From positions 850,438-862,724 of the forward strand of contig JAWQFM010000009.1 of NCBI GenBank assembly GCA_033442325.1: 12,287 nt of DNA, in the 5' to 3' direction. Position 1 is the stretch's first letter. Each line of letters begins with the position of its first letter. Below are positions 1,234-10,578 of the stretch, piece by piece. The stretch comes from Salpingoeca rosetta (Eukaryota > Protista > Choanoflagellata). Position numbers and translations under genes: made by a program. The notes beneath the pieces are model-generated. The model did not search any database and had not been told where the DNA came from. It saw nothing but the letters and a program-made list of their open reading frames with translations.

Positions 1234-1850
1234 NNNNNNNNNNNNNNNNNNNNNNNNNNNNNNNNNNNNNNNNNNNNNNNNNNNNNNNNNNNNNNNNNNN
1301 NNNNNNNNNNNNNNNNNNNNNNNNNNNNNNNNNNNNNNNNNNNNNNNNNNNNNNNNNNNNNNNNNNNNNNNNNNNNNNNNNNNNNNNNNNNNNNNNNNNN
1401 NNNNNNNNNNNNNNNNNNNNNNNNNNNNNNNNNNNNNNNNNNNNNNNNNNNNNNNNNNNNNNNNNNNNNNNNNNNNNNNNNNNNNNNNNNNNNNNNNNNN
1501 NNNNNNNNNNNNNNNNNNNNNNNNNNNNNNNNNNNNNNNNNNNNNNNNNNNNNNNNNNNNNNNNNNNNNNNNNNNNNNNNNNNNNNNNNNNNNNNNNNNN
1601 NNNNNNNNNNNNNNNNNNNNNNNNNNNNNNNNNNNNNNNNNNNNNNNNNNNNNNNNNNNNNNNNNNNNNNNNNNNNNNNNNNNNNNNNNNNNNNNNNNNN
1701 NNNNNNNNNNNNNNNNNNNNNNNNNNNNNNNNNNNNNNNNNNNNNNNNNNNNNNNNNNNNNNNNNNNNNNNNNNNNNNNNNNNNNNNNNNNNNNNNNNNN
1801 NNNNNNNNNNNNNNNNNNNNNNNNNNNNNNNNNNNNNNNNNNNNNNNNNN
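1234..1850. other. Assembly gap (617 N)
   Basis: Run of N in the sequence. Confidence 1.
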
Positions 1851-3568: not shown

Positions 3569-3706
3569 TTATTGCTTGGCGGCCTTGAGACGCATGGCCA
3601 TCTCGCGGTCTGCCTGTGTCTGCTTGCCGGCAGTCCTTGTGTAGACGAAGAAGATGGTGGCGGCGAGGGCAGCCTGGGCAGCGACACCCTTCATGTTACC
3701 GAACAT
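3569..3706 (-). CDS. Putative 45-aa microprotein MFGNMKGVAAQAALAATIFFVYTRTAGKQTQADREMAMRLKAAKQ (one hydrophobic segment plus basic tail)
   Basis: ATG at 3706-3704 in a caacaATG context, TAA at 3571-3569. Strongly biased codons: all Lys AAG, Phe TTC, Leu CTC, Val GTC, Ile ATC, Tyr TAC, Asn AAC, and 8 of 11 Ala GCC. Downstream AATAAA at 3261-3256. Confidence 0.6.
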   Translation of the reverse strand: MFGNMKGVAAQAALAATIFFVYTRTAGKQTQADREMAMRLKAAKQ

Positions 3707-3880: not shown

Positions 3881-4111
3881 ATGATGGTCGGAGAAAAAAT
3901 GAACGCGGCGTACACACGCACATCACACAGCCAAACAACCCCTTGCTGTCTAGCCGCTTCTCGCAAGCACCGCAGGCTGGCACTGTGATGCGAGGACGTT
4001 GTGTTCTTGCTTCAGTGCCCACCATCGCTCAAGCAAGCACCATCGCCCCTTGCATCAAGCTTCTTGGTGTGTGTCAGTGCTGCGCTTGCCTCATGCTCGG
4101 CTTGTAGAAGT

Positions 4112-4117
4112 TTTATT
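4112..4117 (-). promoter_or_regulatory. Candidate polyadenylation signal AATAAA for the TIR-ARM gene
   Basis: tttatt on + at 4112-4117 in an AT-rich patch about 275 nt downstream of the stop at 4391. Confidence 0.4.
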
Positions 4118-4208
4118 GAAAATATCACATAATTATCGTTGTGTCCGGGTTGGCGGCAGCGTTTGTTTGTGTTTGGGGCAGTGGCGGGCAGCAGTGCAGC
4201 AAAGACGG

Positions 4209-4218
4209 ACACACACAC

Positions 4219-4291
<73 letters not shown>

Positions 4292-4386
4292 CACACACAC
4301 ACACACACACACACACAACAACAACAACACACACACACACATACATACGCACACACACAACAACAACACACACACCACAACACACA
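4209..4386 (+). repeat. Compound (CA)n/(CAA)n microsatellite just after the stop of the TIR-ARM gene
   Basis: Read directly. Confidence 0.95.
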
Positions 4387-4390
4387 TGAA

Positions 4391-5339
4391 TCAGTGGTCT
4401 CCTTGTTCTTCCTCGGCCTTGTGCTTGTCATGGTGCAAAGGGAAGGCCAGCGAGAGCGGGCAAGGTAGGACAAGGCGGCGCAGTAGGTTGACTGCGGCTG
4501 GGCGGAGGAGCTGGCGACATGTCGAGGACACTCTCATCGCCTGGCGTTGGCGGACAAGCAGGCTCTGCACGGCATCGCCCAAGTGCATGGACAACATGCG
4601 CACGCGGGCAGCCGCATCAAAGGAGAGGTTGAACAAGGCACGCAGCACAGCCGCCGTAGCGCACGTGTTGTTCTGGTGTCGGACAAACGCACCCAGCAGT
4701 GCTTGGACGCCACCTTTCGTCGCCACGTGCCTGCGGATGACGTGGCTGCTGCATGTGAGCTGCTCGATGAACACGGCCACTGCAGTCACGAGGCCGCCGT
4801 CGTCATCCAGGCTGTCGTGTGTGCTCAGTGCGCTCAGTGCCAACTCGATGCCGTTCCGGCGCACAATCGAGTGGCGTGCGCCTCCCACCGCAGCCAGCGC
4901 TGCCATGCCCTCGAGTGCGTGTGTTTGCACAGCCATGTCGCCCGGGTGCGCTTGCATTGCTGTGCAGAGCGCCGCAATTGCACCCCCGTCGATCAGCTCG
5001 CGGTACCCGCATGAGGACGACGGCCCTTGCATCTGCATGTCGCACCCACACTCATGTTCGCCAATTAGTGGCACGGCAGCACGTGCGTGTGCCGATGTGT
5101 CCGAAGCGGCGCTTCCGCCGCCATGTGCAACCTGTTGGTGGTTCGCTGCAAGCTCGTTGATGGCGCTCTGGAAGCTAGCGTGTGCGGCCGTGGCCCGTCG
5201 GGTGGCACTCAGCACCAGGTCGCACCCACGGCGCTGGATATGCACGTCGGATGAGCGCTCGGCCATGGCGCGCAGCACTGTTCTGATTGGCATGCCATCA
5301 TGCAGCTGTGATGCCAATGAAGGGCACTCGGGAAACCGC

Positions 5340-5375
<36 letters not shown>

Positions 5376-6664
5376 GTGGGTGATGTGTCCAGCCGATCAC
5401 CACCAGACAAGCACGATTGCGCCAGTGATGGTGGTATGGTCGCTGGCGATGGCGATGGGGACGACGGTGCTGACAGCAGTGGTGACGATGAAGCGTGGGT
5501 GATGCTGGAGGTGCAGAGCCCGTTCAGGCGCTGCTTTCGCAGACCGTGCGTCCTGGGAAGATGGCTGGTATTGTTCGTGCCAAGACTGCTTGTGCTGCTG
5601 GTGTTGCTGATGCTGCTGGTGTGAATGCTGATTCCTGCAAACGTGCCAGTCGTGGACGTGTTTGTGCGGCGTGGCTTGCTGTTCGGCGGAGGGACAGAGG
5701 GGAACAGCCTCGCTGCCTGTGGCTTTGGCAGCTGTGGGCGGCGCGGTTCGGGCGGAGCAGTCGTAACTGGGGGTTGCTTTGCCGTTGTGGTTGCCGGCGC
5801 TGTTGGCGTCATGCGTGTCGCCATGCCCGTGTTGAGACTGTTGGGAGCGAGGCTGCGTACTCGGCGAAGGCCTTGGTGCTCATGTGGGAAGCGTGTGTCC
5901 TCAGACCGCGTGTGGATACGTGGCAGCGTGCCCGTGCTCTGCGCTGCTGGTGAGAGGGTGCGGGGCCGCTGGCGCATGCCCCTCGGATCGCTGACGGTGC
6001 GGCGCGGCGAACGGTGGCCCAGACTTGGCGACCGACTGCTGCGGTGGGAAACAAGCGACGTATCCTTGCCCAGCACGTGCATGAGGGCCAGGATGAGCTT
6101 TTGCGGTGGCCTGTCGCTGCACTCGGCCGTACCCATGTGCCAGTGCACCGTTGCTATCGCCTCGAGCCCGGCAGGAAGGCGGATGCTGCTGCTGCTGCTT
6201 GATGGTGCGACATTGCTGCCTGGCTGCGAGGGAGGGCGTGAGCGACGGCGCTGCACCGGGCTCGCCATGGCCGTCCACAAGTTGACAACGATGCACGGCT
6301 TCTTTGTAGTGATGATGGAGCGAAGGACGGCTGCGGTGCTGTGGCTGTTCCACATGTGTGCCCTCCCTGCACGTGAGGATGCCGCATTGTTGTCTGGACC
6401 CACGGGCTCGTGTATGTCCAGGATGATGATTGCTCTTGCCATCTGTATGAGCTCCAGTAACGCGATGTCTGCCTCATGGGTGGTGGATGAGCCGTGGTGG
6501 TGCTTGCTGAAGAGCGCGCTGGAAGGGAGGCGCACAGACGCGACGTCGTGCATCTCCAGCCATGCCTTGAGCTTGCCTGCAGGCACGATGGCTTGTCGTG
6601 ACCAGTAGATAATGGAGATAACCGGCGTGGCAGCTCGGTCTTGGATCTGCACCTGAGCACACAT
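4391..6664 (-). CDS. 757-aa protein: N-terminal TIR-like domain (about 6625-6068), S/T/P/R-rich disordered linker with polyQ, C-terminal armadillo repeats (about 5293-4505)
   Basis: Long uninterrupted ORF. ARM-type repeats: IRTVLRAMAERSSDVHIQRRGC, GGAIAALCTAMQAHPGDMAVQTHALEGMAALA, NGIELALSALSTH, GGVQALLGAFVRHQNNTCATAAVLRALFNLS. TIR-like elements appear in the expected order (VISIIYW...LIQMARAIIILD...TTKKPCIVVNL...LPAGLEAIATVHW). The true 5' end is uncertain. Confidence 0.85.
5342..5371 (-). repeat. Coding (CAG)10 encoding polyQ
   Basis: (CTG)10 on +, translated as Q10 in the 757-aa ORF. Confidence 0.95.
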
Positions 6665-7047
6665 GGCCCGCTCGTGACGCGTAGTAGCGAAGGGGGAGGG
6701 GGTGTGCTGAAAGAGGGGAGAGCGGGGGCGGCTCGGAAAGCGGATCAGGAAGTTGGTAGAGCGTCAAAGTCTCGCGTTTGACTGGTGGGTGCGGTTTCGG
6801 TCTTGGGTGCTCGCACTGTTGCCGAAAAGGACGGGAAAGGAGGATGAGGATGAGGAGGATGAGGAGGAGGGTGCGTCTGCTCGTCTGGCGGTATCTATGC
6901 GTCTGGCTCACAGGCAGAGGCTGGGCAGATGGGTGTTGTTGTTGTAAGTGCGCTGGTCGGATACGAAGCTGTTCCTCTCCCTCTCGGTGTCCTGTTTGAG
7001 TGTTTGCGTGCCTGAGGGCCTGCTTGAGTGCTTCATGTGTTGGTTAC

Positions 7048-7067
7048 GGGGGGGGGGGGGGGGGGGG
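7048..7067 (+). repeat. G20 homopolymer
   Basis: 20 consecutive G. Confidence 0.95.
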
Positions 7068-7673
7068 CGACCACCAGGGGTTTAGTCGCACACGACCAAC
7101 GATGGCACACTGCTGTGGTGCAGGATCAGAGGAGTGGAATGCTTCTGTCTTTCTGCGCGTGCTGTTCTTGCTGGTGTGTGCACATGCAAGGATGAGTGGT
7201 GGTCGGTGAAAGTGTCAACTTGCCACGGAAGAAATGAATCTGGCTGCTGGTCGGAGACAACCCAACAACCAAGTCTTGCTGGTGGCTTATAGCAATGGCT
7301 GACGTCGAGAACACAAAGCCCACAAACGACAAGCAGCCCTCTTGACGACACAGCCAACATGCGCAATGGTGCGAGGCAGCCTGCCCCCACCATGACCAAC
7401 ACACAACTACACGAACAAGACGCACCAACTAGTTCGTTGGCTTTCCTGGAATTTCGTTTTGAAGCGCGTGCGTGTTGCCTGCGCTTGACTGCTTGGAAAA
7501 CGTCATTGCAACGCGAAAGCGTGGTTGGGTGCAAGGTCTTCCCTTGCGACTCTCCTTTCGACTTCCAGGAACAGACAGACACACTGTGAATAATCTGGCG
7601 TGCTTGCTTGCTGGGTGGTTGCTCATGAAGCTTCGGGAGGGCGTGTCTGCATGCCGTGCGGAATGTAATGTTG

Positions 7674-8500: not shown

Positions 8501-8594
8501 CTAGACAGAACACAGCAACGAGAAGGACAGGCGTCAGTACACAGTGCTCATGACACAAAACAAGGACGCGGCACAAAGAGGCAAGGAAAACGAA

Positions 8595-8748
8595 ACACAC
8601 ACATGCACACGCATGCACACATAAACACATGCACACACATGCACACACACATGCACACATATGCACACACACACATATGCACACACACACACACACACGA
8701 ACACATGCACACACACACATGCACATACACATGCACACACGCGCACAC
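8595..8748 (+). repeat. Degenerate (CA)n/CATG microsatellite, intronic
   Basis: Read directly. Confidence 0.9.
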
Positions 8749-10077
8749 CTTGGTTGGATGAAGTGGTCTGAAACAGCTGAGCCATCTTGCCTGGTGTGAG
8801 CAAGTTCATGTCAAGCACGGGAAAGAACTCATCTGTTCGTTGATTGTGGCGTTGCTGAGGTGTCCGCGCACGTGCACAGGCCCGCACCCGCTGAGAAACG
8901 GGGGTTGTCACCGACGCATCGGCAACAGACACCGTCGGGCAATACGCAGGTGCCTGTCGCCAGCTCTCCAGGTTCGGTTGCGCGGCGTTGCTTGCAGGCA
9001 AGTGTGCTGGAAACACGCCCAGCGCCTGAGAGACAGGTGGCAAGGTCGACACAGACCCGGTCGAGACAGGCTGGAAGGATCCAAGCGGGGCGCCCACCAT
9101 CGCGTGTTCCGATGAACCCGAAGTCTGCGCTGGTGTTGACACGCCCTGCTGGCCACTGCACGCCTGGCCTGCCGCCATCGACAACGCACCGTCGCTCACC
9201 AACGTCATGGGAGACGACGATGATGAAGCTGAAGACGACGACGATGCTGACGACGAAGAAGTTGGCTCCGCCGAGGACACCGCGTGAGCGATAGGGGCAA
9301 AGTGTGTTGCCGACGGCATGGATGGCCACGCGAACTCAGACGCTGATGGCAAATAGGAAGGGAAGGCAGCGCCAGGCAATACGGGCGACGGCAGTGACTC
9401 GGGCGAGGACGAGGACACCGACAGCGTCGACGGCGACACAGATGCTGCAGACGCCAACCGATGTCCATGCTGGGTGCGGTGCTGTTGCTGCTGCTGCCGC
9501 TGGTGGTGGTACTGGGGCATACTGCTCGGATAGAACTCGGGAACAGTATCGGCCGGCTGCTGGTGAACGCGGTGCGATGGCACGGGCATGGTGGATGCAA
9601 ACGAGGCCGTGGCCTCGCAGTGGCTGGCCTTGAATACCTGCTGCTGTGCAGGGAAAGAGGGGTGGGACTCGCGAGAGACGGGGACTGATGAAGGGTGGTA
9701 CAGCATCTGAGACTGCGGCTGCTGTGTGGACATCATGTTGGTTGAACAACCTGCTGAGCCAGGGAGGCCGTGAGGATGGGGTACGTGGTTCTGCTGCTGG
9801 CGTTGTTGATGCGGGTGGTAGTATGCCGGCTGCGAGTGCTGAGAGTGCTGGTGCTGTTGGTGTTGGTGAGGCAGCATGTGCATGGGGTGATGCGGCATGT
9901 TGCCCATGCCATGTGGCAGTCCGTTTCCTGACACCTGCAGCTGAGCCACCGGCCGGTTGCTTGCGGTTGGTGGAGGAGGCAAGGCTGCTCCTCGGGGAAA
10001 CTGGTGGGTCGGTGCGCTACGGCGTGCCACGGGTGGATATGCAAGCCTCTGCTTGCTCGGGTGCAGTTGACGCTCAG
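8749..10077 (-). CDS. RAVER-like protein, large low-complexity (P/Q/H/S) exon
   Basis: Acceptor gtatgcag|CT GAG (phase 1), 1329 nt open, donor |gtgtgc at 8748 followed by a degenerate GT repeat. Confidence 0.8.
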
Positions 10078-10120
10078 CTGCATACAAGCACAGATTACAC
10101 AACCACATCAGCCAGTGTGT

Positions 10121-10124
<4 letters not shown>

Positions 10125-10204
<80 letters not shown>

Positions 10205-10236
10205 GTGTGTGTGCGTGTGTGTGTGTGTGTGCGTGT
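10125..10236 (+). repeat. (GT)n microsatellite, intronic
   Basis: Read directly. Confidence 0.95.
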
Positions 10237-10242
10237 TTGTAC

Positions 10243-10289
10243 TTCGCATATCTGAAGCACGCCATTCGCATATCTGAAGCACACCATTC
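10243..10289. repeat. 22-bp tandem duplication ttcgcatatctgaagcac(g/a)cca x2 plus partial third unit, intronic
   Basis: 10243-10264 versus 10265-10286, one mismatch. Confidence 0.9.
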
Positions 10290-10314
10290 CAACCGAATTG
10301 CAACACCAACCCAC

Positions 10315-10369
10315 CTCTTGCTTTGGCCTTGGCCACCTCCTCCTTTCCATGCATGATGCTTGCACCCGT
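10315..10369 (-). CDS. RAVER-like protein exon: TGASIMHGKEEVAKAKAR
   Basis: Acceptor catcag|, donor |gtgggt. Phase 0 in, phase 1 out. Occupies the position of the post-RRM3 helix of RAVER (PGRSMLAALI in human RAVER1, from memory). Confidence 0.75.
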
Positions 10370-10578
10370 CTGATGACAGTAACGAGAGCACGCCACGAAC
10401 GGCACGTTGTGAGCGTTCAAAGAGGCAACACGCAACCTGCACGTGGACGGGCATGTCTGCCCACCACCCACGTCACACACACGCACAAAAGCGCGCGCGC
10501 ACACTCGCACACACGCACACTCGCACACACACACACCCCCCATCACACATGTACACATGTAGATGTGCGTTTGCCGAC

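What the first reader, a model, noticed from the sequence alone, without database searches (positions are those of the whole stretch)
4391..6664. TIR-like domain + disordered linker + armadillo repeats: a SARM1-like domain pair in reverse order
Seen: residues about 14-199 follow the TIR fold in order: betaA VISIIYW, alphaA AGKLKAWLEMHDV, alphaB LLELIQMA, betaC RAIIILD, alphaC MWNSHSTAAVLRSIITTKK, betaD PCIVVNL, alphaD/betaE LPAGLEAIATVHW, alphaE QKLILALMHVLG, with two low-complexity insertions. The C-terminal ~260 aa are ARM repeats. Established: animal SARM1 (ARM-SAM-SAM-TIR) uses its ARM region to autoinhibit and regulate a TIR NADase, and TIR domains act in immune signalling across kingdoms. 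Inference: this may be a lineage-specific TIR-ARM sensor or adaptor, with no SAM domains evident and inverted domain order, in a probable unicellular holozoan. The TIR is degenerate enough that automated annotation could call it only an ARM or hypothetical protein.
Basis: partly seen in the sequence, partly recalled or inferred. Interest (0 to 1): 0.8.

Follow-up and report, generated by a model that had tools for sequence, protein, structure and literature searches.

The report
Orphan choanoflagellate ARM protein, possible cryptic TIR
This is a real but weakly expressed Salpingoeca rosetta gene (PTSG_04831) with armadillo repeats at its end and, at its start, an alpha/beta domain that looks TIR-like only to a protein language model, lacks the TIR catalytic glutamate, and belongs to a TIR-plus-armadillo layout already known in choanoflagellates.

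Summary
The 757-codon ORF at 4391-6664 (minus strand) is real. It is Salpingoeca rosetta PTSG_04831, annotated "hypothetical protein / Armadillo repeat-containing domain".

**C-terminus.** The armadillo (ARM) reading holds at sub-threshold level: Pfam ARM_ARMC5 scores E 5e-5, and Atlas and Foldseek match beta-catenin, importin-alpha and the SARM1 ARM region.

**N-terminus, residues 14-199.**
- No profile or pairwise method detects a TIR. I tried Pfam, PADLOC, NCBIfam, PDB sequences, two TIR profiles built here, and hhalign.
- An exhaustive phmmer search of 1.84 billion representative proteins found only the protein itself.
- AlphaFold2 without an alignment failed (pLDDT 36.5).
- The only positive evidence comes from ESM. 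All 40 nearest embedding clusters are TIR or unnamed, scoring 0.91-0.93. With TIR families excluded the best score drops to 0.84. The Atlas model superposes on TIR models at TM 0.50-0.59.
- The putative alpha-C helix has no acidic residue, so if this is a TIR it is non-enzymatic.

**Context.** TIR+Arm proteins are already reported in choanoflagellates (PMC6040629). Earlier unchecked notes of this scan describe about a dozen in this genome on other DNA.

**Verdict.** Most likely a fast-evolving, non-catalytic TIR-like/ARM scaffold (about 50%). It is not a SARM1 analogue. Interest is modest.

The parts
4391..6664 (-). Uninterrupted ORF of 757 codons plus stop. This is the gene PTSG_04831 of Salpingoeca rosetta (annotated product 723 aa).
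   Evidence: An independent run's contigs reproduce the DNA at 4376-5330 and 5381-7067 with no letter differences.
6068..6625 (-). N-terminal alpha/beta domain, ORF residues 14-199, a candidate degenerate TIR-like domain. Strands: VISIIYW, SVR, AIIILD, CIVVNL, IATVHW. They alternate with four amphipathic helices; the alpha-D position between the fourth and fifth strands is a low-complexity loop with no helix. There are two low-complexity loops.
   Evidence: DSSP element order. ESM Atlas TIR neighbours score 0.91-0.93 against 0.84 without TIR, and TM is 0.50-0.59. No profile hit. No relatives.
6224..6256 (-). 33-nt GT..AG segment that the public annotation removes as an intron. It encodes 11 residues of the loop after the fourth strand.
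   Evidence: Removing this and the two other segments reproduces P0001 exactly. No RNA read covers it.
5838..5860 (-). 23-nt GT..AG segment removed by the annotation. It shifts the frame of the linker.
   Evidence: Splicing is unverified, and the length looks too short for a spliceosomal intron (inference).
5369..5414 (-). 46-nt GT..AG segment removed by the annotation. It restores the frame just before the poly-Q run.
5330..6067 (-). Disordered linker, ORF residues 200-445, rich in S, P, T and R. It contains a (CAG)11 poly-Q run at 5341-5373. Either reading frame gives low-complexity sequence.
   Evidence: Composition, tandem repeat, ambiguous codon-position GC here.
4460..5329 (-). C-terminal all-helical ARM-like region, ORF residues 446-735. 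The best-supported core is residues 555-715 (window 4520-5002), roughly four to six repeats.
4209..4386 (.). (AC)n microsatellite starting five bases after the stop codon. Reads cannot be placed on it.

Best explanation
PTSG_04831 is a real, species-restricted Salpingoeca rosetta gene for a three-part cytosolic protein.

1. An N-terminal doubly wound (beta-alpha)5 domain of about 190 residues. It is most likely a TIR domain diverged beyond the reach of sequence profiles, and it has lost the catalytic glutamate.
2. A disordered linker of about 245 residues, rich in Ser, Thr, Pro and Arg, with a poly-Q run.
3. A C-terminal armadillo solenoid of about four to six repeats.

Inferred mechanism: it acts as a scaffold or adaptor, not an enzyme. 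The TIR-like domain would dock by TIR-TIR contacts onto some of the many TIR proteins of this organism. The ARM groove would bind an extended peptide of a partner. The linker would be a site for phosphorylation.

Shown here: the gene, its layout, the ARM-like fold, and the absence of relatives. Inferred: the TIR identity, the lack of catalysis, and the adaptor role.
For: - **Gene and layout:**
- **ARM region:**
- **Alternating beta/alpha elements** in the order of a TIR.
- **ESM embedding:** all 40 nearest clusters are TIR_2, TIR, ThsB_TIR or unnamed, at 0.91-0.93. With the TIR families excluded the best named cluster scores only 0.84 and is DUF4062.
- **Atlas model:** it superposes on TIR-cluster models at TM 0.50-0.59 by query. 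A 120-aa TIR model is covered at TM 0.76 by that model.
- **hhalign:** the only alignment to a ThsB-type TIR family is in register for alpha-B, beta-C, alpha-C and beta-D, though not significant.
- **Non-catalytic reading:** no D or E between residues 92 and 135, and W105+4 is Ser. TcpC has W-T-Q-Y-E, and the ThsB-like family has an invariant Glu.
- **Prior:** TIR+Arm proteins occur in several choanoflagellates. Earlier unchecked scan notes report about a dozen in this genome, also without the Glu.
- **Transcription:** sense-oriented RNA reads lie on both halves in one run.
Against: - **No profile or pairwise support for TIR:**
  - Pfam, PADLOC and NCBIfam gave no hit at E <= 10.
  - PDB sequences gave no TIR hit.
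  - A 16-sequence TcpC-like TIR_2 HMM run without filters reported no domain at all, while 1593 of 2000 shuffles were reported.
  - hhalign gave probabilities of 0.5% and 0.04%.
  - Smith-Waterman z-scores were -1.0 and 0.9.
- **No relative in 1.84 billion representative proteins**, so no conservation supports a folded domain.
- **AlphaFold2 single-sequence model:** pLDDT 36.5, with meaningless Foldseek hits.
- **Limits of the ESM evidence:**
  - It is a single source.
  - The top hit shares 159 of 256 features. This is below the 170 that 9 in 10 true family members reach.
  - Shuffled proteins reach 0.9 in 4-10% of cases.
  - The Atlas model is weak overall (pTM 0.42, pLDDT 0.57).
  - A nucleoside 2-deoxyribosyltransferase cluster superposes about as well (TM 0.56/0.65).
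- **Expression is very low** in the three RNA runs, about 1x.
Confidence: 0.5

Rival explanations
1. The N-terminal domain is a folded flavodoxin-like or Rossmann-like alpha/beta domain that is not a TIR homologue. It could be nucleoside 2-deoxyribosyltransferase-like, or another or novel doubly wound domain. The protein would be an ARM-repeat protein with an unrelated small N-domain.
For: - The beta/alpha alternation is generic to this fold class.
- A nucleoside 2-deoxyribosyltransferase cluster matches the Atlas model as well as TIR clusters do, at TM 0.56/0.65.
- All TIR profiles fail.
- The TIR catalytic residue is absent.
Against: - The embedding neighbours are exclusively TIR or unnamed.
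- Non-TIR named families drop to 0.84 or below, and the best of them is DUF4062. From memory, untested here, DUF4062 is itself classed as TIR-like.
- No profile of any other family hits either.
Confidence: 0.27
2. The N-terminal 200 residues are not a stable domain, or are not part of the same product as the ARM region. On this reading the long ORF is partly a by-product of a GC-rich sequence with few stop codons, and the real protein is an ARM protein with a different start or exon structure.
For: - There are no relatives at all.
- AlphaFold2 confidence is very low.
- Many long ORFs occur in other frames of this GC-rich window.
- The public model already alters the ORF with three tiny introns.
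- RNA depth is about 1x, and no read covers 5952-6293.
Against: - The N-terminal part has a coding-type codon-position GC pattern, GC3 0.68-0.82 against GC2 0.42-0.55.
- Both the raw ORF and the annotated model keep the two parts in one protein.
- Sense reads lie on 6294-7205 and on 4698-5267 in the same run.
- The amphipathic beta/alpha pattern is not low complexity.
Confidence: 0.08
3. One reading: a SARM1-like sensor in which the ARM region autoinhibits an enzymatically active TIR NADase, with the domains in reverse order.
For: - The domain pair is TIR-like plus ARM.
- Foldseek lists the ARM region of SARM1 among weak matches to the C-terminal model, at E 0.12-0.21.
- Catalytic TIRs exist in S. 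rosetta.
Against: - No acidic residue at or near the catalytic position.
- No SAM oligomerisation domains.
- A disordered linker of about 245 residues lies between the parts.
- No detectable homology to SARM1 in either half.
- TIR-ARM packing could not be modelled.
Confidence: 0.05

Closest known systems
Choanoflagellate cytosolic TIR proteins paired with Arm repeats (Richter et al. 2018, eLife, PMC6040629). This scan's unchecked notes s1-431395 and s1-433390 describe TIR-ARM genes of S. rosetta.
   Same: Same organism group. Same pair of modules, with the TIR-type domain before the ARM repeats. Per the scan notes, also intronless or nearly so, and also lacking the catalytic Glu.
   Different: Those proteins carry Pfam-detectable TIR domains. 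Here no profile sees a TIR, and no paralogue is detectable by phmmer or word search. Membership in that gene family is therefore not shown.
Animal SARM1 (ARM-SAM-SAM-TIR NADase)
   Same: It contains an ARM region and a TIR-type domain. The SARM1 ARM region is among the weak structural matches to the C-terminal model.
   Different: The order is reversed. There are no SAM domains. There is no catalytic Glu. There is a long disordered linker. No sequence homology is detectable in either half.
Bacterial TIR_2 / ThsB-type TIR domains (TcpC, Thoeris ThsB, MTH538-like)
   Same: They are the nearest ESM-embedding and ESM-structure neighbours. The element order is the same, and a Trp opens the putative alpha-C.
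   Different: No significant profile or pairwise score. The catalytic Glu is replaced. There are two long low-complexity loops.
ARM-repeat proteins: ARMC5, beta-catenin/plakoglobin, importin-alpha, ARM_LRRK2/STKLD1-type
   Same: Helical-repeat C-terminus with weak but consistent sequence and structure matches.
   Different: All scores are below family thresholds. No orthologue was found.

Membership tests
TIR domain (Pfam TIR, TIR_2, ThsB_TIR, SEFIR) | Significant match to a family profile | tested here: not met
   - No hit at E <= 10 in Pfam, PADLOC or NCBIfam.
- hhalign to the ThsB-like alignment gave Prob 0.5%.
- My own TcpC-like HMM reported no domain, and hhalign to it gave P 0.86.
TIR domain | Flavodoxin-like fold: a five-stranded parallel sheet with alternating helices (betaA-alphaA through betaE-alphaE) | tested here: inconclusive
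   - The element order fits, but the AlphaFold2 model is unusable (pLDDT 36.5).
- The ESM Atlas model matches TIR models at TM 0.50-0.59. It also matches nucleoside 2-deoxyribosyltransferase at 0.56.
TIR domain (enzymatic subclass: SARM1, TcpC, ThsB, plant TIRs) | Catalytic glutamate early in alpha-C (W-x-x-x-E in TcpC) | tested here: not met
   - The query reads W105-N-S-H-S, and there is no D or E from residue 92 to 135.
- TcpC has W-T-Q-Y-E, and the ThsB-like family has an invariant Glu.
- This test depends on an unproven alignment.
TIR domain | Detectable homologues that are TIR proteins | tested here: not met
   Exhaustive phmmer of residues 1-195 against 1.84 billion representatives returned only the protein itself.
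TIR domain | Language-model and predicted-structure neighbourhood | tested here: met
   TIR clusters score 0.91-0.93. With TIR families excluded the best score is 0.84. This is a single evidence source, and the shared-feature count of 159 is below the usual 170.
SARM1-like (ARM-SAM-SAM-TIR) | Tandem SAM domains for octamer assembly | tested here: not met
   No SAM family at E <= 10 on the full protein.
SARM1-like | ARM domain packs on and inhibits the TIR | not testable with these tools
   No alignment was available, both structure-prediction jobs gave low confidence, and no full-length model was made.
Armadillo-repeat proteins | Match to ARM profiles, or a right-handed superhelix of three-helix repeats | tested here: inconclusive
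   - ARM_ARMC5 scores E 5e-5, but 23 bits against a cut-off of 79.9.
- Beta-catenin/plakoglobin score E 0.06-0.3.
- Atlas ARM clusters reach TM 0.56-0.62.
- Foldseek gives rmsd 4.5-5 A over about 190 columns to importin-alpha and beta-catenin, but with E above 0.1 on a pLDDT-51 model.
- The evidence is consistent in direction and sub-threshold in every test.
S. rosetta TIR-ARM paralogue family (scan notes) | Sequence similarity to the other TIR-ARM genes of this genome | not tested
Indirectly negative: searches found no relatives.

The most novel reading that the evidence does not exclude
The N-domain is a true TIR that has drifted beyond all profile detection, yet still signals. It would do so either through a non-glutamate active site or through ARM-gated oligomerisation, making it an independently evolved, reversed-order counterpart of SARM1 regulation in a close relative of animals.
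Probability: 0.04. Interest if true: 0.7.

Novelty: new member of a known kind. Interest (0 to 1): 0.3.

Why it matters
If the N-domain is a TIR, this gene shows that the already very large TIR repertoire of Salpingoeca rosetta is under-counted by HMM-based censuses. It would also show that some members evolve fast enough to become sequence orphans, which matters when reconstructing pre-animal innate-immunity toolkits.

It would add one more non-catalytic TIR-ARM adaptor candidate, testable by genome editing in S. rosetta.

It does not open a new kind of system. The TIR+Arm layout is published for choanoflagellates, and the SARM1-like enzymatic reading is unlikely.

Tried and rejected
1. **Family scans.** Pfam, PADLOC and NCBIfam scans of residues 1-200, 1-135 and the raw-ORF version gave nothing.
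2. **PDB sequence search of the N-domain.** It gave only a chance UbiD-like hit at E 0.5.
3. **Relative searches.**
   - Exhaustive phmmer on the N-domain found the protein itself only.
   - Word searches on the full protein and on the ARM region found the protein itself only.
   - No alignment could therefore be built for structure prediction.
4. **AlphaFold2 single-sequence runs.** The N-domain reached pLDDT 36.5, and its Foldseek hits were meaningless at TM 0.1-0.2. The ARM part reached pLDDT 51.
5. **TIR profiles built here.**
   - A ThsB-like family seeded from a CFT073 TIR protein was too narrow, at 70-99% identity.
   - A TcpC-like TIR_2 set of 16 sequences came from E. coli and plasmids.
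   - Neither profile detects the query.
   - Shuffle-controlled Smith-Waterman was not significant.
6. **Other searches.** tblastn of the N-domain against plasmids found no match. The search for related loci with the TcpC TIR found nothing.
7. **RNA reads.**
   - Depth is too low to test the three annotated micro-introns.
   - The apparent joint 5609->7047 is rejected as an artefact. The 7047-7067 side is simply the poly-G tract matched by poly-G read tails. The other side is a 23-nt CTGCTGGTG-type repeat.
   - Run X4's gap-free contigs would argue against the introns if that run is RNA, but its nature is unknown.
8. **Steps deliberately skipped.**
   - I did not feed AlphaFold2 an alignment of the query with TIR proteins, because that would force the answer.
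   - I did not paste TIR sequences from a paper's supplement or from memory.
9. **Literature.** A search for PTSG_04831 found no paper.
Full report
**1. What is at the coordinates**

- The window holds an uninterrupted ORF of 757 codons on the minus strand, from ATG at 6664 to TGA at 4391-4393.
- The word search identifies it as hypothetical protein PTSG_04831 of Salpingoeca rosetta. UniRef names it "Armadillo repeat-containing domain".
- The look-up by exact sequence places it on supercontig GL832965.1 of GCA_000188695.1. It lies between a 758-aa gene and a multi-exon 391-aa gene, and no neighbour carries a TIR family.
So was its prediction that automated annotation would see only ARM or "hypothetical".

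**2. Gene model**

- The public protein (723 aa) is not the raw ORF.
- Removing three GT..AG segments reproduces it exactly:

| Segment (window) | Length | Effect |
|---|---|---|
| 6224-6256 | 33 nt | trims 11 residues from a loop of the N-domain |
| 5838-5860 | 23 nt | puts about 140 linker residues into another frame |
| 5369-5414 | 46 nt | restores the frame before the poly-Q run |

- Both readings are low-complexity in the linker, and both keep the N-domain and the ARM part in one protein.
- Codon-position GC is coding-like over the N-domain and the ARM part. It is ambiguous in the linker.
- Introns of 23-46 nt look too short to be real (inference). I could not settle this.
- In three raw-read RNA runs the gene has a depth of only about 1. 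Reads are in the sense orientation, and in run X19 they lie on both halves. None covers 5952-6293, and there are no junction reads.
- Contigs of a fourth run match 4376-5330 and 5381-7067 without gaps. This confirms the DNA sequence. It would argue against the micro-introns only if that run is RNA, which is not on record.
- The reported joint 5609->7047 is a poly-G read-tail artefact.

**3. The C-terminal part**

- Pfam gives ARM_ARMC5 at E 5e-5 on the isolated C-terminal construct (its residues 76-216, ORF 555-695), and E 3.3e-4 over ORF 555-694 on the full protein. The score is 23 bits, far below the gathering score of 79.9.
- PDB sequences give plakoglobin and beta-catenin at E 0.06-0.3.
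- The ESM Atlas places residues 405-723 among ARM_LRRK2, Arm and ARMC5 clusters at 0.92-0.94. Its model superposes on ARM proteins at TM 0.56-0.62.
- A single-sequence AlphaFold2 model is all-helical, with pLDDT 51.
- Foldseek aligns about 190 columns of that model to importin-alpha, beta-catenin and plakoglobin at rmsd 4.5-5 A. The E-values are not significant. SARM1's ARM region is also listed.
- Every test points the same way and none passes a threshold. I accept an ARM-type solenoid of about four to six repeats.
- No relative of this part was found among proteins of 0.55-1.75 times the length.

**4. The N-terminal part: tests that failed**

That is the alternation of a doubly wound alpha/beta domain.
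- Everything that could have tied it to TIR by sequence failed:
  - Pfam, PADLOC and NCBIfam gave no hit at E <= 10.
  - PDB sequences gave no TIR hit.
  - hhalign to a ThsB-type TIR alignment gave probability 0.5%.
  - I built a TIR_2 profile from TcpC and 15 diverse plasmid TIRs. Run with all filters off, it reported no domain in the query, while it reported most shuffles. hhalign to it gave P 0.86.
  - Shuffle-controlled pairwise scores were z -1.0 and 0.9.
- The exhaustive phmmer search of 1.84 billion cluster representatives returned the protein itself and nothing else. This was justified because the family scans left the domain open.
- With no relatives there was no alignment. AlphaFold2 gave pLDDT 36.5 and useless Foldseek matches.

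**5. The N-terminal part: the one positive line of evidence**

- The ESM Atlas search by language-model features puts residues 1-195 among TIR_2, TIR and ThsB_TIR clusters. All 40 nearest hits are TIR or unnamed, at 0.91-0.93.
- As a control I excluded six TIR-type families. The best named cluster then fell to 0.84 and was DUF4062. From memory, untested here, DUF4062 is itself TIR-like. The signal is therefore specific to TIR.
- The Atlas's own model superposes on TIR-cluster models at TM 0.50-0.59 by query. It covers a 120-aa TIR model at 0.76. It matches a nucleoside 2-deoxyribosyltransferase cluster about as well.
- Caveats stated by the tool:
  - The two Atlas searches count as one source.
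  - The shared-feature count of 159 is below the 170 typical of true members.
  - Shuffled proteins reach 0.9 in 4-10% of cases.
  - The whole-protein model is weak (pTM 0.42).
- Two further points weigh in favour:
  - An independent reader named the same family out of thousands.
  - The one hhalign alignment is in register for alpha-B, beta-C, alpha-C and beta-D.
- I put a TIR-like identity at about one half, and some flavodoxin-like fold at about three quarters.

**6. Catalysis**

- TIR enzymes need a glutamate early in alpha-C. SARM1's is cited in PMC6040629.
- TcpC shows the motif W-T-Q-Y-E, and the ThsB-like family has an invariant Glu.
- In the query, the Trp that opens the putative alpha-C is followed by N-S-H-S. 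There is no Asp or Glu anywhere between residues 92 and 135.
- If the domain is a TIR, it is of the non-enzymatic, adaptor kind.
- Three further points make the SARM1 analogy one of parts, not of mechanism:
  - No SAM domain.
  - The long disordered linker.
  - The lack of homology to SARM1.

**7. Comparison with what is known**

- Richter et al. 2018 state that Arm and Ank repeats and SH2 domains are found with intracellular TIR domains in multiple choanoflagellate species.
- A 2026 preprint shows catalytic, cADPR-producing TIRs in S. rosetta. The S. rosetta entries visible in its stored supplement tables pair the TIR with TPR, or list no other domain.
- Earlier notes of this scan (AI notes, unchecked by me) describe TIR-ARM genes on other DNA of this genome. 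They report "roughly a dozen", lacking the glutamate, and a very large TIR repertoire overall.
- So the scan has found this kind of gene before on other DNA.
- What is particular here is that the putative TIR is invisible to profiles and that the whole protein is a sequence orphan.

**8. Verdict**

The ORF, the layout, the ARM region and the alpha/beta pattern hold. TIR is not shown by any statistical test.
A TIR-like adaptor is plausible. A SARM1-like enzyme is unlikely.
- Novelty: at most a new, highly diverged member of a known kind.
- Interest: 0.3.

Noticed in passing
window 1235-1850: A run of N (an assembly gap). It explains the apparent 22% GC dip in the composition profile. It interrupts the neighbouring plus-strand gene, which has a coiled-coil-like ORF resuming at 1851.
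   Followed up: partly
window 6224-6256, 5838-5860, 5369-5414: The public gene model of PTSG_04831 contains three GT..AG 'introns' of only 33, 23 and 46 nt. Two of them change the reading frame of a low-complexity linker. They look like gene-caller artefacts, but RNA depth was too low to tell.
   Followed up: partly
window 3900-4127: RNA reads in the same orientation as the gene reach depth 10-22 here, against about 1 inside the coding region. This is just beyond the (AC)n repeat that follows the stop codon. It could be a 3'-biased 3' UTR of this gene or a separate unannotated transcript. An earlier first-reader note puts a 45-aa microprotein ORF at 3569-3706.
   Followed up: no
window 5587-5609 and 7047-7067: Dozens of reads in three RNA runs join a 23-nt CTGCTGGTG-type repeat to the 20-nt poly-G tract. 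They carry the same 26-nt foreign prefix and poly-G tails. This is a short fragment from elsewhere plus a sequencer poly-G artefact, not a splice.
   Followed up: yes
window 4376-5330 and 5381-7067 (run X4): Contigs of one 2024 run cover the gene without gaps at very high word depth (1099 and 573). The depths differ two-fold between the two halves, and the run has only 31 Mb of contigs in all. It may be RNA or a targeted library. If it is RNA, the gene is unspliced and strongly expressed under that condition.
   Followed up: no
window 8534-10558 (minus strand): A 674-codon ORF rich in Q, H, S and P, flanked by CA/TG microsatellites that translate as Cys-Val and His-Thr runs. It lies inside the annotated 758-aa neighbouring gene, which another first-reader note reads as a spliced three-RRM gene.
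   Followed up: no
L002 2764-5301 (E. coli CFT073, NC_004431.1 2202763-2205300): Next to tcpC lie a second, ThsB-type TIR gene of 169 aa on the opposite strand and a macro-domain gene. The 169-aa protein has over 1700 near-identical relatives (70-99% identity) across very different bacterial phyla.
   Followed up: no
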